Sequence record: MN159079.1
DNA: 64,000 nt
Strand: one strand, 5' to 3'
The notes beneath the pieces were generated by a model that saw nothing but the letters and a program-made list of their open reading frames with translations, was not told the DNA's origin and made no database searches. The position numbers were made by a program, and so were the translations under genes. Positions within the stretch are counted from its first letter, which is position 1. Each line of letters begins with the position of its first letter. Of the stretch, positions 35,621-43,966 are shown piece after piece.

Positions 35621-36631
35621 ATGTTACCCATTATTGTTGGTGGTATCGCTCTGGCTGCAATCTTCGGTGGTAAGAAAGCATATACCGGACACAGGAAGAA
35701 TGAAAGTGCTGAGGAATTGTTCACACTATCAGAGACTTGCCGAGTAGAGAGTGAAGAGAGTATTAAGCGCTCATCTGAATCACTGGATGAACTCATCAAC
35801 AACTATACGTTGTTCTGTTCTGAATTTGGGAAGGAGATTAATTCCTTTACTATATTGGCTAAAGAAGTAACCGGCGTTCCTGTCACTGAGCTTAACCTGA
35901 ACATTAAGTATGATGACCTGGTTATTGCAACCAACTACGGTGAAGTTGCTAAGGGTATCGCGACAACAATTTCAGGTGGTGTGCTCACTGGCGCACTGAT
36001 GGGGTTCGGTGGTTGGGGGAGTATGTTGTCTCTAGGTGTCGCTAGTACAGGCACACCCATTTCCGCGTTAGCTGGTGCGTCAGCTACCAACGCAGCCCTG
36101 GCTGCATTTGGTGGTGGTAGTCTGGCTACTGGCGGGTTGGGTATCGCCGGCGGTGTAGCCAGTCTGTCTGGAATCACTGTTGTTCCCGCTCTGGCAGCAA
36201 TGGGTTGGAAATATGACCGTGACGCCACCGCTAAATTAGATAGCGCACTTAATGTGGCCGAGGCCGCTTTAGAATTGCGCGAGAATGCCAAGAAGCTCGA
36301 TACGTTCGTTACCGAATTAGAAGAGTACATCGGTTTGGTAATGACTGCGTTAACCAGAATCCGCGAAATCTTTGGTGAATACCACGAAGCACTGCGTAAT
36401 CTCGATATTCTTATAAAAGAACGTCGGGTAAACGAAATCGTGGAAGACGAAGAAAAGCGCATCATTTCGAACGCAATGAACCTGGGCCAGATCGCAGCCA
36501 AGATCATGACCACACCTCTGCTGGTCACTGAAACTGTAGACAACGAGCTTGTCATCAAGAAGAATGATGACGATCTCCCTGAAATAAATTGTGATGGTTT
36601 CATGGCTATAATGGAAAATACCAATCCCTAA
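35621..36631 (+). CDS. Glycine-zipper membrane-inserting protein with coiled coils
   Basis: N-terminal anchor LPIIVGGIALAAIFGG; central GGVLTGALMGFGGWG...STGTPISALAGASATNAALAAFGGGSLATGGLGIAGG. Confidence 0.75.
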   Translation: MLPIIVGGIALAAIFGGKKAYTGHRKNESAEELFTLSETCRVESEESIKRSSESLDELINNYTLFCSEFGKEINSFTILAKEVTGVPVTELNLNIKYDDLVIATNYGEVAKGIATTISGGVLTGALMGFGGWGSMLSLGVASTGTPISALAGASATNAALAAFGGGSLATGGLGIAGGVASLSGITVVPALAAMGWKYDRDATAKLDSALNVAEAALELRENAKKLDTFVTELEEYIGLVMTALTRIREIFGEYHEALRNLDILIKERRVNEIVEDEEKRIISNAMNLGQIAAKIMTTPLLVTETVDNELVIKKNDDDLPEINCDGFMAIMENTNP

Positions 36632-36642
36632 TAGGAGCAAAT

Positions 36643-38217
36643 ATGCAAACTCAAACTTATGATTGGACTGGTGAGTTCAACAAAATGATGGTAAACAGTC
36701 TGATCACAACGTTTGGGTTAGACCCAATGTTGTTTGATGACAAACGAGGTGGTAACGTCACCACTCTCCACAATGTTCGTTCTGAAGGTCTTGTGGCTGG
36801 AGAACATCATCGTGAACTGATAGCGAATAAGCCAGAGTATGACGCGCACGCCGCTCATAACGTTAAGGAATTCCTTGACGCTAAAGCCGAACTCAAGGTA
36901 TTGCGTAAAAGCGGGGTAGAGATCCAAGATGCTTACTCGGATCAAATCCTTAACAATTCCAGAACTGACCTGGATCACATCGTCTCTGCTAAGGCGATTG
37001 ATGCAGATCCGGCAAGAATCATTTCTGGATTGAACGTGGGTGAACTTGCCGCTATAGAGGAAAACCTCACTCCTACCTCTGCGAGCATTAACCGTTCTAA
37101 AGGTGCTGATTCCGCTGATGAGTTCGAGAAGCGTATTAAACGTGATCAGAAAGTCAGGGATAAGTTCAGAGCGAGTATCGCTGGGAGAACAGATCTCTCC
37201 AAGGAAGAACAGCAAACCCTTAATCTTTACGATCAACAAGAGATGATCGATTTCGATAAGATGCGGGAGCTTGAAGCAAAGGCCAATAACGCTCGTCAAC
37301 GTAAAGAGGACGATGCTTATTATGCGAGTGTTGACTTTGCCAAGCACACAATCAAGGACGCCGGTATCAGCGGTGTAAAGAACGGGACCAAGTTGGTACT
37401 CGGCACTTTGTTCACTGAACTCTGGTTTGAACTTAAAGCAGGTATCCCCGAGATCTATAAGAAACATTCCGGACATTTCGTTCTCGTTAACTTTATGTCT
37501 GATGTTCGTGATCTCCTGGATAAATGCTGGGAACGGATCATGGTTAAGATAGCTGAGGTTCCGGCGTTGTTTATGAACGGCTTGTTCTCTGGTGTAATTA
37601 CCAGTGTAACAACCACCGTAGTTAACAAGGCCACCACTACCGTTAAGCTCTTTGGTCGTTTCTTCAGAACGATCTTTGACGCCATTATCGCCAGTATCAA
37701 AATGATTGTCTTCCCGCCAGCAGGTATGAAGGTTAGCGAACGCGCACAAGGTGTTGTGAACATCCTGTCAGTAGCAATCGCTGGGTGCGTAGGGATCGCC
37801 GTTAATGGTGCTGTAAATGCCAGTTACACAGGTCCCTTCGCAGAAGAGGTCGGCCTCTTCCTGGGCATGCTGGCCACTGGTATTGTAACTATTACTTGTG
37901 GCTATTTCATTAACCATTCACCAACAGTTCAAAAGTTCTGGAATTTCTTCAACCACTTCAAATCAACAGAGGTGCAAACTCTCGAACATACTAACATGCT
38001 TAATGAGAAGCTAAATAAGTTGTTCGAGGATATCGCTGAAGTTGAAATGGGGCTGGATGCAGAAGAACTTTCACAGTTTGTTTCATCCTTGCGTGGAAGC
38101 AGTACTGAATCTGATCGCACTCAAGTACTGAAAGTACAGATCGAGAAGATGGGTATTGACTCACCATTCATCCCAGGAGATATCGAATCCATCGATTCCT
38201 GGTTAGCAACACTTTAA
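36643..38217 (+). CDS. HNH-like (His-Me finger) domain protein with C-terminal hydrophobic helices
   Basis: DLDHIVSAK...ENLTPTSASINRSKG; hydrophobic GVVNILSVAIAGCVGIAV...GLFLGMLATGIVTITCGYF; AGGAG RBS. Confidence 0.65.
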   Translation: MQTQTYDWTGEFNKMMVNSLITTFGLDPMLFDDKRGGNVTTLHNVRSEGLVAGEHHRELIANKPEYDAHAAHNVKEFLDAKAELKVLRKSGVEIQDAYSDQILNNSRTDLDHIVSAKAIDADPARIISGLNVGELAAIEENLTPTSASINRSKGADSADEFEKRIKRDQKVRDKFRASIAGRTDLSKEEQQTLNLYDQQEMIDFDKMRELEAKANNARQRKEDDAYYASVDFAKHTIKDAGISGVKNGTKLVLGTLFTELWFELKAGIPEIYKKHSGHFVLVNFMSDVRDLLDKCWERIMVKIAEVPALFMNGLFSGVITSVTTTVVNKATTTVKLFGRFFRTIFDAIIASIKMIVFPPAGMKVSERAQGVVNILSVAIAGCVGIAVNGAVNASYTGPFAEEVGLFLGMLATGIVTITCGYFINHSPTVQKFWNFFNHFKSTEVQTLEHTNMLNEKLNKLFEDIAEVEMGLDAEELSQFVSSLRGSSTESDRTQVLKVQIEKMGIDSPFIPGDIESIDSWLATL

Positions 38218-38236
38218 ACCAATTGAGGTAACTACC

Positions 38237-38695
38237 ATGAAAAAGATTATTATCGCTAGCGCTTTTGTATTTGGTTCATTTGCAGTTCAAGCCGCTGACG
38301 TAGCCGTGTTGGGTGGTGGGATGTCCTATCACTTCAAACATGAAGGTCAGAACCAGGTACATCCCAGCATCGGGGTACAGATCGATAACTTCTCCGTTCT
38401 GTACACCACCAAGAATTCCATTGAACTCCCGTCCCTCCAGGTAGCTTATGGCGACAACTTCTTTGAATCCAAAGTTGTTGACTTCGGATATCGGGTTGGG
38501 CTTGCCACTGGGTATCGTAAAGGACACAAGTACAGTAACGGTGAATACTACTACGATGGGCACGAAATCGGAAACACTGGACTTCTCCCTCTGGTGACCA
38601 TCACCACCACCATCCACACCCCAATCCCCAAACTTGACTTGGTCGCTGATACAGCACCTAACGTAGTAATGTTTGGTTTTAAATACAACCTGTAA
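38237..38695 (+). CDS. Outer-membrane beta-barrel protein, PagP-like
   Basis: Signal peptide ending VQA-A; alternating beta-strands; SYH, NQVHPSIGV, KNS, GYRVGLATGY, LLPL; C-terminal beta-signal MFGFKYNL. Confidence 0.65.
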   Translation: MKKIIIASAFVFGSFAVQAADVAVLGGGMSYHFKHEGQNQVHPSIGVQIDNFSVLYTTKNSIELPSLQVAYGDNFFESKVVDFGYRVGLATGYRKGHKYSNGEYYYDGHEIGNTGLLPLVTITTTIHTPIPKLDLVADTAPNVVMFGFKYNL

Positions 38696-38705
38696 GGAGT
38701 TAACT

Positions 38706-38936
38706 ATGTCTATTCTGGAAATGATCGCACTGGCTTGCAGCCTGTTTGTCATCGCTGTGTCGTTCATCGCGATATACCATATCAACAGAATGAAGAACCT
38801 CTGCTACAACGATTACGTTGTTCGTGGCGAGATCTGGAGGGTCAGACTGGTGGCTTGGTCCATCAATGCGTTCCTTCTGATCAGTGTTCTCAGACTGGTC
38901 ATGTCGATTTGGATCTATTTCAGCAAAATGTTCTGA
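38706..38936 (+). CDS. Two-TM membrane protein
   Basis: AAGGAG RBS; MIALACSLFVIAVSFIAIY and LVAWSINAFLLISVLRLVMSIWIYF. Confidence 0.7.
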   Translation: MSILEMIALACSLFVIAVSFIAIYHINRMKNLCYNDYVVRGEIWRVRLVAWSINAFLLISVLRLVMSIWIYFSKMF

Positions 38937-39012
38937 TCTATATTTTCTTACCTAGACATCATTGTTATGTCAATGAGTAGAAGTATCCATCCATAAACAA
39001 AGGAATAATACC

Positions 39013-39834
39013 ATGAAAACTCTGCCTAATGAATTCCTGAAAGTAAACCCGATCGCAAGCCAAGTCATCCCGCTCTACTTTGAAGATGCGTGGAACATGA
39101 ACTCCCAGGGTTCTTGGAAGATCAATGGACGTCATGACGATGTCGGTTACGACGTCGAGATCGTTCACGCCCTGGGCTCTGTAATCGTCCGTGGGACGTT
39201 TGGACACAATGTTGGTGTCATCACCATGCCCCGGAACAACATGGCTAAAATGGCCATTGGAGAGACTATGGTGCAGGCAGTTGTCAATCTCGACAACTCA
39301 CGTCTCTGTACCGAAGCCAACCCCCAGTCCAAAGATAAGATCCTGGCTCTGTTCGACGCCGCGTTCTCCCGGGCCAAGCGCGAGGTCAACTACTTCAAAG
39401 CAAGTAACGCCGGCTACAAGGGTGCTGATCTGATGCGTCAAGCCGAGTTCATCGGCTTGGGTGCGATTCTGACCCGACTGATTGCGAACCGGAAGATCTC
39501 CATGGGTGACTTCGAAGTACTCACCATGAGTGGTTGGGAGATTGATTTCGATCGCATGACCGAAATCAACGAAGGCAAAGTTGGTCTCTTCGATGCCCCG
39601 GCTATCATCCTTCGTTCGACCGCGAAGGTGGATATCCACGTCACTCTCAAGGCGACAGGTACTATTATAGTCTCCTTGATAGAACAGGCTGAAGGTGAGG
39701 TCATTCACCGGACAACTCTCCCCATGGGAGTATGTGATCAGATCACCGGTACTCATTCCTCGTTGAATGAGAACTGCACCAGCATGTTCGTGGAACTCTC
39801 CAAGTATATTTTAGGGGGTAAGAACAGGAGTTAA
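39013..39834 (+). CDS. Hypothetical protein
   Basis: AAGGA RBS, 273 aa, strongly biased codons. Confidence 0.75.
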   Translation: MKTLPNEFLKVNPIASQVIPLYFEDAWNMNSQGSWKINGRHDDVGYDVEIVHALGSVIVRGTFGHNVGVITMPRNNMAKMAIGETMVQAVVNLDNSRLCTEANPQSKDKILALFDAAFSRAKREVNYFKASNAGYKGADLMRQAEFIGLGAILTRLIANRKISMGDFEVLTMSGWEIDFDRMTEINEGKVGLFDAPAIILRSTAKVDIHVTLKATGTIIVSLIEQAEGEVIHRTTLPMGVCDQITGTHSSLNENCTSMFVELSKYILGGKNRS

Positions 39835-39836
39835 CC

Positions 39837-40205
39837 GTGAAACCCATCAGGATCAATCCGAGAGCTCAAGCGATTAACGTGGACTACCTGCCCACGCCAA
39901 AGCAATTGGAAGAATGGCACGATGAAGATGCGGTCATTAATCATCTAGCCAAGAAAGTATTAACAAAGTGGTATCAAGTACCTGCCAATAAGGTAGAGAA
40001 AGATAAAGCATTGTTATTCCTTCCGCAGGGTAAGTTGTACGACACACTTATTCCGAAGATGGGAATCAACAAGAGGGATGCGTTTAACCATATGGTGATC
40101 GTCCATGGGATGACAGAACCTGGTTCTCTGCAACTTCACTTGATGATGTACTTTCTTTGTAAGTGGTTCACCAAGAGTTCTCTAAGAACTTATTCTGAAG
40201 CCTAA
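39837..40205 (+). CDS. Hypothetical protein
   Basis: GTG start, AGGAG RBS. Confidence 0.65.
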   Translation: MKPIRINPRAQAINVDYLPTPKQLEEWHDEDAVINHLAKKVLTKWYQVPANKVEKDKALLFLPQGKLYDTLIPKMGINKRDAFNHMVIVHGMTEPGSLQLHLMMYFLCKWFTKSSLRTYSEA

Positions 40206-40207
40206 TA

Positions 40208-40238
40208 ACTCTCTGTCACCCAATGGGTGACAGAGAGT
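40208..40238. terminator. Bidirectional terminator
   Basis: actctctgtcaccc-aat-gggtgacagagagt. Confidence 0.8.
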
Positions 40239-40241
40239 TTA

Positions 40242-40523
40242 CTATTTATTATTTCTTTTGGTCATCGGAATGACAACAGGGCGTTTATAGTTGTCATCAC
40301 TACGATAGATCTGGAGATAAATTAATTCATCATCCCCAGTGGGTTCAGCGGCGACCCTAAAGGGGTAAAAGGTCAAACTGTCTTTGCCTTGGGTAAGGTT
40401 AGTGTAATAACCATCTATTGTCCCAGCCAGGTATGTCTTAGCTAAACCAGTGGAAATGTCCGTATATGGGATGGGACGTTCCTTTCTATTTATGTGTAGC
40501 CCGAAATTAGGCATGGGATTCAA
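40242..40523 (-). CDS. Hypothetical protein
   Basis: Isolated minus-strand ORF between a terminator and a promoter motif. Confidence 0.55.
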   Translation of the reverse strand: MNPMPNFGLHINRKERPIPYTDISTGLAKTYLAGTIDGYYTNLTQGKDSLTFYPFRVAAEPTGDDELIYLQIYRSDDNYKRPVVIPMTKRNNK

Positions 40524-40648: not shown

Positions 40649-43600
40649 ATGAAACTGTCTAACATCGCAATGATTATCGGGGCCGCTTTCGCCTCAGTGT
40701 CCTTCACCGCTTCGGCGGTAAAAGACCCGAACAAATACGGTCAAGATAACCACTACATCATGCTGGACATTATGCAAGTGGAAAGCGAGGTTAACTCCCT
40801 CGAATGGAAAATGGACAACCAAAAGGTTGACCTGTCCAATCTGACTGGTCGTGTCGATACCAATGAAGCGGATATCGCTGAACTCAAGCAAACCGCTGAT
40901 CAGGTTGATGGTGTGATCAATTATGTCACCAACAACCGTGAAGAGATCCAGGCCAAGTTCCAAAAGGAAGTTAACAACAGTGTGAATAACTACGTTGTTA
41001 ACAACCAGGCTGGTTTCGATGCTCACATTCAGAAGGTTGTAGAAGGAACCATGGCCGACAACCCCGCTGTCGATCTGGATCCGATCAATCAACAACTCGC
41101 TCAGAACTCCAAGGACATCGAACGTCAGGAAAAACTCATCCGTGATGAGAAATCCAAGATGGATGGCGTATCCACCATCATGTTCGGTGGTAAAGCCACC
41201 ACCAATGAAAACGGTACGTTCGTTGGATTCCAGCGTGAAGAAAGTGGCCAGCTGGTAGTCGGTCCTAACGGTGAACTCTACGGTTACAAAGAGAACGCTG
41301 GTCTGTACGGTCGCTACCGTCTCTTCGAAGACGCCACTAATGCAGAGTTGGGTCGCCTGGATAAGGTGAAAGCCAATAAGGACGATCTCATCGCTCTGGA
41401 TAGCCGGGTTGAAGTTGTTGAAGGTGATGTTGCTGTGATCAATGGCAAGATCGAAAAGGTTGAACGTGTTGGAGGTAAAATTGCTGCCAATGTTGACGTT
41501 ATCGTTGACAAGGGTAACAGTGTTATCGAAGGTGCTAAGACCAGCATCAACAACAGCATCGACAACAAGATCGAAATCGCCAAGGGTGAAGTTAATACCC
41601 AGATCGACAACTCCATCACTAACATTGTGAACGGTGGTAACACCGAGATCAATGCCAAGTGGGAAGGTGCCAAGGCCACCGCTAACGATTTCGACGAGCG
41701 GATCACCGCTAACAAGAATCGTATCGATGACCAAGCCGGTCGTATTGGTAAGGTTGAAGATCTCAGTGCTCAGAACGCCAAAGATGTCAAAGCAGCTAAC
41801 AAAGAACTTGTCCGTCTGGACAATGTCAAAGCTGACAAGACTGACCTGGACGCTCTGGGTGGTCGTGTTGACGTAATCGAAGGTGACGTAGCCACCATCA
41901 ATGGTAAGATCGAGAAGGTTGAAGGTAACAAAGACCTGATCATCTCCAAGGTTGGCGATGCGTACACCAATGTACGTACCGACATCACCAACGAGATCAA
42001 CAGCACTGTAACCGGTGCAATTGATGTTGCGATTGACAATGCCAAAACCACTGTGAACAACAAGTGGGAAGAAAACAAAGGTGATATCGTTGCCAATGTT
42101 AACGGCAAAGTCGAGAACATCCAAAATGACATCACCAACAACGTGATGAACCAAATTGGTGACATCGTAATTGATGGTAACAGCGAAACCGTTATCAACA
42201 TCAAGAACGACATTACCAAGGATGTAACCAACCAACTCAAACTCGATGGCAAGGGCGTTGCTCTGAACATCAAGAAAGAGATTCAGGAAGGTAACAACGA
42301 CATCTACAACAACATCTCCGGTAAGATCGAAGGTAAGTTCGATGATCAGTACGCTACCCTGGTAGCTATGGGTCAGGCTGAATCCGATCGTCTGGAAGCT
42401 AAGAAGGCTGACAAAGCAGATCTCGATGCCGCTGTACAAGCTGGTAAAGATGAAGCTGCCAACATCAATGCTTCTATTGGTGCAATGGGTGACCGTGTAA
42501 CCAATGTTGAAGGTGACGTGTCCAACATCAAGCAGGATGTAACTAACATCCAAGGTGATATCACCACTATCCAAGGTGACGTTGCTAACATCAACGGCAA
42601 AATCTCTTACGTCGAAAACAACAGCCAGGAAATCATCAACAAGGCTGGTGCTGCTGTAGACGCCAAGATCGATGTTGCTTACGAAGGTGCCAAGACCGAA
42701 GTGACCAATCTGTACGACAATGCTCGTACCGAAATCACTAACGAAATTGACAACGCCGTAAACGTTGCTGTGGAAGGTGCTCGTACTGAAGTTAACAACA
42801 AGTACGAAACCATCAAGAACGAAGTCGTTAACGGTGATAACAACACCTACAATTCCATCAAGGCTGACATCAGCAAAGATGTGAAGAACGAAATCGTCAA
42901 CAACATCACTGAAGGTAACAATACCGTTGTAAACGAAATCAAAGATGGTCTGGTTGAAGAAATCCGCGAAGAAGGTAAAACTGTCGTAGTGGATCTCCAA
43001 GACCAAATCGATGCGGCTAACGCACGTATCGATGTACAGACCGGTCGTGGTGAGCAGGCTTGGGCTTCCTATCAAGAAGACCGTGCGTATGCCACCCAGC
43101 AGTATACCCAGGATCGTCAAGTTGCCGTAACCACTTACAACAACGCCCGCGTTGAAGCTGAAAGTGCTTATGTTACTATGGATGATAAGAAAGCCGACAA
43201 GTCCGATCTGGATGTATTGAATGACAAAATCGATGGTGTCGCTGCCAACGGTAAAACCGACGAAGAAATCAAGGCTATCGCAGACCAAGCTGCTGCTGAC
43301 GCTGTAAACAATGCCAAGAAAGAAGTCGTCGTGGCTGTTAAAGACAAAGCTCCTGTAGTTAACGAAGCTGTAACCGCTGCTAAGACCGAAGCTAAGAAGC
43401 AGGTACAAGCTAGCATTGATGCGTCCATCTCCAAAGCGAAAGCCGCCGCTAAAGACCAAGCTGGTCAGGCTGTTGCTGCTGCTAAAGAGAAAGCACGTGC
43501 TGAGCTGGCCGCTGCCATGCCTGAGCTGAAAGGTAAAGCAGAAGTTGTTCGTACCGAAGCTGTTGAAACCCGCAAGCGTGCTGACCTGGCCCTGAAAGCC

Positions 43601-43966
43601 ACCCAGGACAACCACACTGCAATTCAACAAGAGCGTGCTGATCGTATCCAAGGTCAGCGTGAGACTCTGCAATCTGCCAACAACTACACTGATCAGAAAG
43701 TTGAACAACTGCGTGGTGAAGTCGAGCATAACCGTCGTAAGGCTGCCGCTGGTATCGCTGGCGTGGCTGCAATGACCAACATCCCGACTATCTCCCAAGG
43801 TAAGAACTTCGCGATTGGTGCTGGTATGGGTTACTACGATGGCGAGCAATCCCTGGCTATCGGTTCCCAAGGTCGTTTCAACGAGAACCTCACTGGTAAA
43901 GCAACTATCTCCACCGACTTCCACGGCAACACTGTAATTGGTGCTGGCGTAGGTTTCGAGTGGTAA
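40649..43966 (+). CDS. Trimeric autotransporter adhesin (type Vc) with YadA-type membrane anchor
   Basis: Sec signal peptide ending TASA-V; ~1000 aa Asn-rich coiled coil; C-terminal AAAGIAGVAAMTNIP...AIGAGMGYYDGEQSLAIG...TVIGAGVGFEW; GAGGA RBS. Confidence 0.92.
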   Translation: MKLSNIAMIIGAAFASVSFTASAVKDPNKYGQDNHYIMLDIMQVESEVNSLEWKMDNQKVDLSNLTGRVDTNEADIAELKQTADQVDGVINYVTNNREEIQAKFQKEVNNSVNNYVVNNQAGFDAHIQKVVEGTMADNPAVDLDPINQQLAQNSKDIERQEKLIRDEKSKMDGVSTIMFGGKATTNENGTFVGFQREESGQLVVGPNGELYGYKENAGLYGRYRLFEDATNAELGRLDKVKANKDDLIALDSRVEVVEGDVAVINGKIEKVERVGGKIAANVDVIVDKGNSVIEGAKTSINNSIDNKIEIAKGEVNTQIDNSITNIVNGGNTEINAKWEGAKATANDFDERITANKNRIDDQAGRIGKVEDLSAQNAKDVKAANKELVRLDNVKADKTDLDALGGRVDVIEGDVATINGKIEKVEGNKDLIISKVGDAYTNVRTDITNEINSTVTGAIDVAIDNAKTTVNNKWEENKGDIVANVNGKVENIQNDITNNVMNQIGDIVIDGNSETVINIKNDITKDVTNQLKLDGKGVALNIKKEIQEGNNDIYNNISGKIEGKFDDQYATLVAMGQAESDRLEAKKADKADLDAAVQAGKDEAANINASIGAMGDRVTNVEGDVSNIKQDVTNIQGDITTIQGDVANINGKISYVENNSQEIINKAGAAVDAKIDVAYEGAKTEVTNLYDNARTEITNEIDNAVNVAVEGARTEVNNKYETIKNEVVNGDNNTYNSIKADISKDVKNEIVNNITEGNNTVVNEIKDGLVEEIREEGKTVVVDLQDQIDAANARIDVQTGRGEQAWASYQEDRAYATQQYTQDRQVAVTTYNNARVEAESAYVTMDDKKADKSDLDVLNDKIDGVAANGKTDEEIKAIADQAAADAVNNAKKEVVVAVKDKAPVVNEAVTAAKTEAKKQVQASIDASISKAKAAAKDQAGQAVAAAKEKARAELAAAMPELKGKAEVVRTEAVETRKRADLALKATQDNHTAIQQERADRIQGQRETLQSANNYTDQKVEQLRGEVEHNRRKAAAGIAGVAAMTNIPTISQGKNFAIGAGMGYYDGEQSLAIGSQGRFNENLTGKATISTDFHGNTVIGAGVGFEW

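What the first reader, a model, noticed from the sequence alone, without database searches (positions are those of the whole stretch)
38237..38695. Phage-encoded PagP-like outer-membrane beta-barrel, a possible lipid A-modifying enzyme or receptor mask
Seen: signal peptide, amphipathic strands and a C-terminal beta-signal (FGFKYNL). Aligning by eye to PagP as recalled gives SYH ~ TWH (catalytic His), QNQVHPSIGV ~ YNERPWGGGFG, TKNS ~ FKDS (Ser kept, Asp changed to Asn), GYRVGLATGY ~ GLGFTAGVT, GLLPLVTI ~ VLLPLASV. Known: PagP is an 8-stranded barrel that palmitoylates lipid A. Inference: the phage remodels host LPS or occupies the outer membrane, for example for superinfection exclusion or stress tolerance of the infected cell.
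Basis: partly seen in the sequence, partly recalled or inferred. Interest (0 to 1): 0.7.

Follow-up and report, generated by a model that had tools for sequence, protein, structure and literature searches.

The report
Phage mini PagP-like outer-membrane barrel
A lytic jumbo Aeromonas phage encodes a small secreted outer-membrane barrel that is a distant, stripped-down relative of the bacterial lipid A palmitoyltransferase PagP; databases already carry that label for identical proteins, and no one has tested the function.

Summary
The ORF is real: window 38237..38695 (+), 152 aa, in Aeromonas phage D9. It has a Sec signal peptide, eight amphipathic strands (AlphaFold pLDDT 94.6) and a C-terminal beta-signal.

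It does not pass Pfam's PagP model. Other tests still place PagP as its nearest characterised relative:
- It belongs to phrog_3600, which E. coli PagP also hits (E 1.3e-6). OmpX, OmpA and OmpW do not.
- Family versus PagP profile comparison gives 85.6% probability, against decoy scores of 18 or less.
- Small Burkholderia and Ralstonia phage proteins bridge the two families, and one reaches Pfam's PagP cut-off.
- The two best solved-structure matches are PagP crystal structures, only narrowly ahead of OmpA.

The alignment puts the family's near-invariant His32 and Ser61 on PagP's catalytic His33 and Ser77. Catalytic Asp76 is replaced by an invariant Asn, and PagP's N-terminal amphipathic helix is absent.

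The enzymatic role remains inference. RefSeq already names the identical phage D3 protein "PagP", so this is a new member of a catalogued, untested phage family.

The gene lies next to two defence-candidate homologues and near a YadA-type autotransporter gene.

The parts
38225..38228 (+). Shine-Dalgarno-like GAGG, 8 nt before the start codon
   Evidence: Read from the sequence.
38237..38695 (+). CDS of the mini PagP-like outer-membrane barrel precursor, 152 aa including the stop codon
   Evidence: ORF list. 100% identical to the Aeromonas phage D9 and D3 proteins. phrog_3600 E 3e-29.
38237..38293 (+). Sec signal peptide, residues 1-19, with predicted cleavage after V-Q-A
   Evidence: Charged start, hydrophobic core and A-x-A-type site read. 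The model shows only a helix at residues 2-12, and strand 1 starts at residue 22.
38294..38692 (+). Mature eight-stranded beta-barrel, residues 20-152
   Evidence: AlphaFold pLDDT 94.6 with eight strands. The best PDB folds are PagP 3gp6 and 1thq, then the OmpA transmembrane domain.
38324..38332 (+). S30-x-H32 motif at the outer end of strand 1. H32 aligns with PagP catalytic His33.
   Evidence: S30 in 91/93 and H32 in 92/93 family members. hhalign register. The same S-x-H is in BcepIL02 gp22.
38351..38356 (+). N39-Q40 in loop L1 (family consensus N-E), aligned with PagP's invariant N-E
   Evidence: N39 in 88/93; position 40 is E in 78/93 and Q in 10/93. PagP N72 and E73 (precursor numbering) are invariant in A4. 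Register.
38414..38419 (+). N60-S61 in loop L2, aligned with PagP Asp76-Ser77 (Asp replaced by Asn)
   Evidence: N60 in 93/93 and S61 in 90/93. hhalign register. A local hmmsearch of the PagP profile aligns a family member in the same register.
38669..38692 (+). C-terminal beta-signal, the last strand ending ...FGFKYNL
   Evidence: Sequence. Family C-terminal residue is F 55, L 23, I 7 of 93.
35621..40205 (+). Run of six same-strand ORFs that contains the barrel gene (products of 336, 524, 152, 76, 273 and 122 aa)
   Evidence: ORF list. The same gene order is annotated in phage D3. The two upstream products hit PADLOC candidates PDC-M09A and PDC-M40B.
40207..40239 (+). Terminator-like hairpin (15-bp stem followed by a T-rich tail) that closes the run of ORFs
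   Evidence: Consensus scan. This is a pattern match only.

Best explanation
The ORF encodes a secreted protein that the host Sec and BAM machinery would insert into the outer membrane of the infected Aeromonas cell as a 133-residue, eight-stranded beta-barrel.

It belongs to a mostly phage-borne family (phrog_3600) that is a remote, minimal relative of the lipid A palmitoyltransferase PagP. It has the same barrel. The aligned counterparts of PagP's catalytic His33 and Ser77 (H32 and S61) sit at the outer ends of strand 1 and strand 3, facing the LPS leaflet. It has no N-terminal clamp helix, and an invariant Asn replaces Asp76.

The most likely mechanism is PagP-like acyl chemistry on outer-leaflet lipids, with a Ser/His pair assisted by Asn attacking an acyl ester. 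The outcome would be either transfer of the acyl chain to lipid A or another acceptor, or plain hydrolysis. Either way the phage would remodel the outer membrane during lytic infection.

Shown: the ORF, the export signals, the barrel fold, the remote link to PagP, and conservation of the polar residues at the outer rim. Inferred: catalysis, substrate, timing and the benefit to the phage.
For: ORF and signals.

Fold. PagP 3gp6 (E 6.3e-5, TM 0.56) and 1thq (E 6.2e-4, TM 0.54) are the two best PDB matches.

Family: phrog_3600 at E 3e-29, and all 93 relatives hit it. E. coli PagP hits the same PHROG at E 1.3e-6, whereas OmpX, OmpA and OmpW do not at E<=10.

hhalign of the family against PagP: 85.6%, E 5.6e-6, score 39.2. 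Reversed decoys scored 10.9 and the best of 40 column shuffles scored 18.2.

Bridges:
- BcepIL02 gp22 scores 24.8 bits on Pfam PagP, whose cut-off is 24.
- gp22 aligns to the D9 family at 94%, or 85% without signal peptides. Gerry's protein aligns at 94% and 79%.
- Both align to PagP at 76-90%.

Conservation: S30 91/93, H32 92/93, N39 88/93, N60 93/93, S61 90/93. By the strand topology, all of these lie at the extracellular ends of strands or in loops L1 and L2.

Inward-facing positions are small or hydrophobic in the outer half of the barrel and charged in the inner half (inferred from strand alternation). PagP's acyl pocket has the same layout.

PagP without its helix is still catalytically active (PMC2887491). 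H33, D76 and S77 are the residues important for PagP function (PMC5740924).
Against: - No Pfam PagP hit at E<=10 for this protein. Only 3 of 93 relatives reach E 0.03-1.
- The family profile finds no PagP chain in the PDB at E<=10.
- BLASTP against PagP and against BcepIL02 gp22 finds nothing meaningful.
- With single sequences and signal peptides removed, PagP (score 25.6) is only slightly ahead of the OmpA transmembrane domain (22.2).
- The family-to-PagP comparison drops to 62% after the signal peptides are trimmed.
- The Foldseek margin over OmpA is about tenfold in E-value, and TM is only about 0.55.
- The catalytic Asp is replaced in every member.
- No member of the family has been tested experimentally (no names beyond the automatic label).
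Confidence: 0.55

Rival explanations
1. The protein is a non-catalytic surface barrel, as Lom, OmpX and Ail are. It would occupy the outer membrane to mask or alter a receptor, exclude superinfecting phages or change cell adhesion. On this reading the conserved His, Ser and Asn are structural or ligand-binding.
For: - The fold is nearly as close to the OmpA transmembrane domain, Ail and designed barrels as to PagP.
- The catalytic Asp is missing.
- In D9 the gene lies in one run of ORFs with two homologues of candidate anti-phage defence proteins.
- A YadA-anchor autotransporter-like gene lies 2 kb downstream. This suggests a locus devoted to surface or exclusion functions.
- Small outer-membrane barrels recur in phages.
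Against: - Near-invariance of four polar residues at the membrane-water rim, across about 100 clusters that share only about 25% identity overall, is typical of active sites rather than of surface-exposed binding loops, which usually vary.
- No similarity to the Lom/OmpX PHROG or Pfam families. hhalign against OmpX gives 0.3%.
- The extracellular loops are short apart from L3.
- The neighbourhood is not conserved in other phages.
Confidence: 0.2
2. The protein is a true functional equivalent of PagP, as the RefSeq name says. It would transfer palmitate from phospholipid to lipid A and thereby raise resistance to cationic antimicrobial peptides.
For: - It carries the same label as phrog_3600 and RefSeq.
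- The aligned His and Ser are conserved.
- D9 has Gly72 at the position aligned with PagP's ruler-floor Gly88.
Against: - The label is an automatic transfer. The original GenBank records say "hypothetical protein".
- Pfam PagP is not matched.
- Asp76 is replaced by Asn in 93 of 93 members.
- The position aligned with Gly88 is not conserved in the family: T 16, N 13, S 12 of 93.
- The phage is lytic, so lasting peptide resistance of the host is of little use to it.
- No activity data exist.
Confidence: 0.15
3. The protein is a generic eight-stranded barrel with no real kinship to PagP. The shared short motifs would be convergent or chance, and PHROG merged two unrelated barrel families.
For: - The sequence signals are weak: 10-14% identity in the alignments.
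- Beta-barrel profiles inflate profile scores. OmpA reached 66.9% when the signal peptides were left in.
Against: - Three motifs occur in the same order and at the same topological positions.
- Reversed and shuffled decoys score far lower.
- PagP profiles give 0.2-0.3% against OmpX, OmpA and OmpW but 79-90% against the bridging phage proteins.
- phrog_3600 is hit by PagP and not by the three control barrels.
Confidence: 0.1

Closest known systems
PagP (CrcA), lipid A palmitoyltransferase of Enterobacteria, Pfam PF07017, PDB 1THQ and 3GP6
   Same: - An eight-stranded outer-membrane barrel of similar strand length.
- The best solved-structure match.
- An aligned S/T-x-H at the top of strand 1, N-E in L1 and x-S in L2.
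- A Pro before the last strand aligned with PagP Pro144 (53/93).
- An interior that is polar in the periplasmic half and small or hydrophobic in the outer half (inference).
   Different: - It does not reach the Pfam model.
- The mature protein is 133 rather than 161 residues.
- There is no 19-residue N-terminal amphipathic helix.
- Asn replaces catalytic Asp76 in all 93 relatives.
- The ruler-floor Gly is not conserved.
- It is carried by lytic phages.
Phage "PagP-like" mini-proteins of temperate Burkholderia and Ralstonia phages (BcepIL02 gp22, 147 aa; Ralstonia phage Gerry pagP, 137 aa)
   Same: - Same PHROG label.
- Same small size, with the signal peptide running straight into strand 1 and no helix.
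- The same S-x-H and Y-N-E motifs.
- hhalign to the D9 family at 79-94%.
   Different: - They keep K-D-S (the Asp is retained).
- They reach or approach Pfam PagP: 24.8 and 20.8 bits against a cut-off of 24.
- No BLASTP alignment to the D9 protein.
- They have different hosts and belong to other phage genera.
OMPLA (PldA) and PagL, outer-membrane lipid hydrolases
   Same: This is a likeness in how it may work, from my own knowledge. Both use a Ser and a His two residues apart on one strand at the outer-leaflet rim, plus a third residue (Asn in OMPLA, Glu in PagL). Here S30 and H32 are two apart on strand 1, and an invariant Asn is present.
   Different: - No sequence family match.
- PagL is only a weak fold match: E 1e-2, TM 0.36.
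- OMPLA is a 12-stranded dimer.
- The order here is S-x-H rather than H-x-S.
Lom / OmpX / Ail family of phage and bacterial surface barrels
   Same: A phage-encoded eight-stranded outer-membrane barrel made from an accessory gene.
   Different: - OmpX maps to phrog_108 (Lom), not to phrog_3600.
- hhalign gives 0.3%.
- Foldseek E is 2.5e-3 or worse.
- Lom-type proteins have long protruding loops and no conserved Ser/His.

Membership tests
PagP (Pfam PF07017) | Sequence reaches the curated Pfam PagP model | tested here: not met
   No Pfam hit at E<=10. Three of 93 relatives hit at E 0.03-1. As a positive control, E. coli PagP scores 217.8 bits.
PagP (Pfam PF07017) | Detectable remote homology to PagP by profile methods | tested here: met
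   - hhalign gives 85.6%, E 5.6e-6; decoy scores were 18.2 or less against 39.2.
- After trimming the signal peptides it gives 62%.
- PagP hits phrog_3600 at E 1.3e-6 and the control barrels do not.
- Bridging proteins link the two families.
- The margin over OmpA is small with single sequences.
PagP (Pfam PF07017) | Eight-stranded antiparallel outer-membrane beta-barrel with signal peptide and C-terminal beta-signal | tested here: met
PagP (Pfam PF07017) | N-terminal amphipathic alpha-helix of about 19 residues before the barrel (PMC2887491) | tested here: not met
   The model has no helix between the signal peptide and strand 1, and only 2 residues separate the cleavage site from the strand. 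The helix is dispensable for PagP activity in vitro.
PagP (Pfam PF07017) | Catalytic His33 at the outer end of strand A | tested here: met
   H32 aligns with His33 and is present in 92/93 relatives.
PagP (Pfam PF07017) | Catalytic Asp76 in loop L2 | tested here: not met
   The aligned residue is Asn60 in 93/93 relatives.
PagP (Pfam PF07017) | Catalytic Ser77 in loop L2 | tested here: met
   S61 aligns with Ser77 and is present in 90/93.
PagP (Pfam PF07017) | Internal hydrocarbon-ruler pocket with Gly88 at its floor (my own knowledge of Ahn et al. 2004; the paper is not held) | tested here: inconclusive
   Strand alternation suggests a small or hydrophobic outer-half interior. D9 has G72 at the aligned position, but the family does not conserve it. 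No model coordinates were available to measure a cavity.
PagP (Pfam PF07017) | Proline-flanked gaps between strands (crenel and embrasure) for lateral lipid access (my own knowledge) | tested here: inconclusive
   P141 (53/93) aligns with PagP Pro144. P118 (79/93) aligns with a neighbouring Pro, not with Pro127. No counterparts were examined for the A/B-side prolines.
PagP (Pfam PF07017) | Palmitoyl transfer from phospholipid to lipid A | not testable with these tools
   No activity data exist for any member. The names in databases are automatic.
phrog_3600 (phage proteins labelled PagP) | Significant match to the PHROG profile | tested here: met
   E 3e-29 over residues 1-152. All 93 relatives match.
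Lom / OmpX / Ail | Match to the Ail/Lom models or to the Lom PHROG | tested here: not met
   No Pfam hit. OmpX maps to phrog_108, not to phrog_3600. hhalign gives 0.3%.
PagL lipid A 3-O-deacylase | Match to the PagL family or fold, with a His-x-Ser and Glu triad | tested here: not met
   No Pfam PagL hit in any of the 93 members at E<=1. Foldseek 2erv gives E 1e-2, TM 0.36.

The most novel reading that the evidence does not exclude
The Asn-type mini-PagP proteins would form a phage-specific clade of outer-membrane enzymes with a Ser/His/Asn centre. Lytic phages of Aeromonas, Vibrio and other hosts (T4-like, jumbo and others) would deploy them during infection to rewrite outer-leaflet lipids. 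The role would differ from classical lipid A palmitoylation. Examples are closing the cell surface to competing phages, keeping the envelope intact until lysis, or helping to break it at lysis. In D9 the protein would be part of a surface and exclusion locus, together with two defence-candidate homologues and a trimeric autotransporter.
Probability: 0.25. Interest if true: 0.65.

Novelty: new member of a known kind. Interest (0 to 1): 0.4.

Why it matters
The name [quoted passage not shown] is spreading automatically through phage genomes. Some papers already read it as a virulence factor.

This analysis shows what the name rests on for the Aeromonas and Vibrio branch. The kinship to PagP is real but distant. 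The catalytic His and Ser are conserved. The Asp is replaced by Asn in every member, the clamp helix is missing, and there are no functional data.

If the family is enzymatically active, lytic phages carry their own outer-membrane lipid-modifying enzymes. That side of phage takeover of the host envelope has hardly been studied. If it is not active, the label is misleading for phage-therapy safety screens, which flag "PagP" as a virulence gene.

Tried and rejected
Searches with no informative result:
- Pfam, NCBIfam and PDB sequence searches with the single protein, and the NCBIfam scan of all 93 relatives.
- PDB profile searches with the 6- and 93-sequence alignments. These gave only chance hits or nothing.
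- The word-based protein search, which found only 5 close relatives. With the 93-sequence profile it found 55 proteins, none with a Pfam domain and none with a name beyond "hypothetical protein", apart from the automatic PagP label on the LAh10 copy. Cluster look-ups gave no names either.
- The IMG/VR scan. The wide alignment had no usable pattern, and the close alignment found no relative.

Steps that fell short:
The PagP profile therefore stayed shallow at 21 sequences of 63% identity or more. No divergent (for example Pseudomonas-type) PagP could be compared.
- Hwang 2002, Ahn 2004 and Raetz 2007 are not held. Statements about the hydrocarbon ruler and the prolines rest on my own knowledge.
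- Model coordinates are not exposed to scripts. I could not measure residue distances, side-chain facing or cavity volume.

Ideas rejected:
- A conserved gene neighbourhood. tblastn of the five D9 neighbours against three phage loci and two bacterial loci found nothing beyond chance-level matches at E>=0.01, though the 76-aa neighbour was again queried out of frame in that call.
- Lom/OmpX membership.
- PagL membership.
- A lipoprotein, because there is no lipobox.

Errors and slips:
- In one search the fifth query (38717-38933) was out of frame. In one search the same 76-aa neighbour was again queried out of frame (38707..38937). The true downstream ORF is 38706..38936, and it has no Pfam or PADLOC hit.
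- The script printed BLAST segment bounds for a related phage whose copy of the gene lies in two frames. I used this only to count one frameshift and did not take it further.

Full report
**Source and observation.** The window is Aeromonas phage D9, a 260,857-bp jumbo myovirus of the genus Ludhianavirus. Window 36000-41000 matches MN159079.1 at 100%, and phage D3 of that genus at 98.9%. GAGG lies 8 nt upstream of the ATG. The N-terminus reads as a Sec signal peptide with a V-Q-A cleavage motif ending at residue 19 and no lipobox. The C-terminus ends ...FGFKYNL.

**Fold.** AlphaFold with six sequences gave an eight-stranded sheet at pLDDT 84.4. With 93 sequences it gave pLDDT 94.6 and pTM 0.81, with all five models at 93.4 or higher. 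The strands are 22-32, 41-49, 52-57, 66-77, 81-90, 117-127, 133-140 and 143-151. There is no helix between the signal peptide and strand 1.

**The family.**
- Full-length relatives occur in 54 phage records: 36 Aeromonas, 16 Vibrio and 2 labelled Stenotrophomonas. They span T4-like, jumbo and about 100-kb phages.
- An exhaustive HMMER search found 101 cluster representatives at E<=1e-3.
- Where context could be read, most are on phage contigs with T4-type genes or siphovirus tail modules. Some are in bacterial chromosomes, next to two-component regulators, transporters and a thiolase.
- None carries a Pfam domain or any name beyond "hypothetical protein", other than the automatic phage label.
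- All 93 aligned members hit one PHROG, phrog_3600. Its description is word for word that of Pfam's PagP family.
- RefSeq copies of the phage genomes carry that name, including the 100% identical D3 protein. The original GenBank submissions say "hypothetical protein".
- The label has been repeated in papers on Vibrio and Burkholderia phages without experiments.

**Is it PagP? Direct sequence tests say no.**
- No Pfam hit at E<=10, and no informative NCBIfam hit.
- No PagP chain found in the PDB with the protein or with family profiles.
- BLASTP against E. coli PagP gives nothing.

**More sensitive tests say it is a distant relative.** I fetched E. coli K-12 pagP from NC_000913.3, an accession shown (gene table). 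From it I built a 21-sequence enterobacterial PagP alignment.
- hhalign of the 93-member family against that alignment gives 85.6% probability, E 5.6e-6, score 39.2 over 103 columns.
- Reversed alignments score 10.6-10.9, and 40 column shuffles reach 18.2 at most.
- E. coli PagP hits phrog_3600 as its best PHROG (E 1.3e-6). OmpX goes to the Lom PHROG, and OmpA and OmpW do not touch phrog_3600 even at E<=10.
- tblastn with PagP found small "PagP-like" proteins in Burkholderia phage BcepIL02 (147 aa) and Ralstonia phage Gerry (137 aa).
- The BcepIL02 protein just passes Pfam's PagP cut-off at 24.8 bits against 24. The Gerry protein reaches 20.8 bits.
- Both align to the D9 family at 94%, or at 85% and 79% with signal peptides removed. 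Both align to PagP at 76-90%. The PagP profile gives only 0.2-0.3% against OmpX, OmpA and OmpW.
- The two best solved-structure matches of the high-confidence model are PagP crystal structures: 3gp6 at E 6.3e-5 and TM 0.56, and 1thq at E 6.2e-4 and TM 0.54.

**Caveats on that link.**
- With single sequences and no signal peptides, PagP scores 25.6 and the OmpA transmembrane domain 22.2.
- The family-to-PagP comparison falls to 62% after trimming.
- OmpA is the third Foldseek hit at E 7.6e-4.
- My PagP profile is shallow, because the genome scan returned only close relatives.

**Residues.** The alignment register is the same in every comparison.

| D9 family position | Conservation | Aligned PagP position |
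|---|---|---|
| S30-x-H32 | S30 91/93, H32 92/93 | T-W-H holding catalytic His33 |
| N39-E40 | N 88/93; E 78/93 (Q in D9) | invariant N-E of PagP's L1 region |
| N60-S61 | N 93/93, S 90/93 | Asp76-Ser77 |

- H33, D76 and S77 are the residues important for PagP function (PMC5740924).
- By the model's topology these positions sit at the extracellular ends of strands 1 and 3 and in loops L1 and L2, the same places as in PagP.
That change is invariant in this branch, whereas the BcepIL02 and Gerry proteins keep Asp.
- G46, G88, G92 and Y93 are also nearly invariant.
- Strand alternation suggests that inward-facing positions are charged in the periplasmic half and Gly, Ala or hydrophobic in the outer half. 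This fits a PagP-like internal acyl pocket.
- PagP's 19-residue N-terminal helix is called characteristic of PagP and its homologues, and it is absent here. Helix-deleted PagP is still active (PMC2887491).

**Mechanism.** The best-supported reading is an outer-membrane acyl enzyme. It would use a Ser/His pair with Asn as the third residue, at the LPS leaflet, acting on acyl esters of outer-leaflet lipids. An Asn third residue is known from OMPLA (my own knowledge). Whether the enzyme transfers the chain to lipid A, as PagP does, or only hydrolyses it cannot be decided from sequence.

The phages that carry it are mostly lytic. The benefit is therefore more likely to fall within the infection cycle (surface closure against other phages, envelope stability, or lysis) than to be lasting antimicrobial-peptide resistance. 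All of this is inference.

**Context.**
- In D9 the gene is the third of six same-strand ORFs (35621..40205), closed by a strong terminator-like hairpin at 40207-40239.
- The neighbourhood is not conserved in other phages, where the gene sits among small unnamed accessory genes. It behaves as a stand-alone accessory gene.
- Some relatives carry damaged copies. In phage 65 the gene is interrupted by one frameshift. In phages 25 and phiAS4 only part of the protein is matched. I did not analyse these further.

- The script printed BLAST segment bounds for the phage 65 copy.
- One query was out of frame, and the same 76-aa neighbour was again queried out of frame. That neighbour's absence from other phages was therefore not actually tested there.

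**Verdict.** This is a real gene encoding a real outer-membrane barrel. It is distantly but specifically related to PagP. It fails three membership tests: the Pfam threshold, the helix and the Asp. It is best described as a member of the phage mini-PagP-like family phrog_3600, Asn subtype. The idea is already present in databases as an automatic name, so novelty is modest. The open question is function.

Noticed in passing
window 40649..43966 (+): This 1105-aa ORF has an N-terminal Sec signal peptide, a long coiled-coil-like middle and a C-terminal YadA-type membrane anchor (PF03895, E 2.9e-14, residues 1048-1105, ending ...GVGFEW). It looks like a trimeric autotransporter adhesin encoded by a lytic jumbo phage. 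That would make it a second predicted outer-membrane protein 2 kb from the barrel gene. RefSeq D3 calls it "putative YadA-like protein, recognition of host receptor".
   Followed up: partly
window 35621..36631 (+) and 36643..38217 (+): The two ORFs directly upstream of the barrel gene match PADLOC candidate anti-phage defence proteins. The 336-aa product matches PDC-M09A (E 1.3e-16) and the 524-aa product matches PDC-M40B (E 9.7e-31). Both have hydrophobic or Gly-rich stretches that look membrane-spanning, and neither has a Pfam hit. A lytic phage carrying defence-candidate homologues next to surface proteins may mark an exclusion locus.
   Followed up: no
window 38706..38936 (+): A 76-aa ORF starts 11 nt after the barrel gene's stop and has two hydrophobic segments. 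It has no Pfam or PADLOC hit. The tblastn look for a counterpart next to the barrel gene in other phages used an out-of-frame query for this ORF, so that point is untested.
   Followed up: partly
window 40207..40239: A perfect 15-bp-stem hairpin with a T-rich tail lies between the convergent + strand run of ORFs and the - strand ORF 40242..40523. It is probably a bidirectional terminator.
   Followed up: no
L087 (Aeromonas phage 65) and the phage 25 and phiAS4 records: Copies of the barrel gene in some T4-like Aeromonas phages are damaged. The phage 65 copy has one frameshift, and the phage 25 and phiAS4 copies are matched only in part. RefSeq still names them PagP.
   Followed up: partly
L007 (JAYRLR010000022.1) and L072 (NZ_JBQPOM010000069.1): A 100% identical E. 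coli pagP sits on a 1,956-bp contig of a "Mucilaginibacter" MAG. A 76% identical enterobacterial-type pagP sits in a "Vagococcus" assembly. Both are probably contamination in those public assemblies.
   Followed up: no
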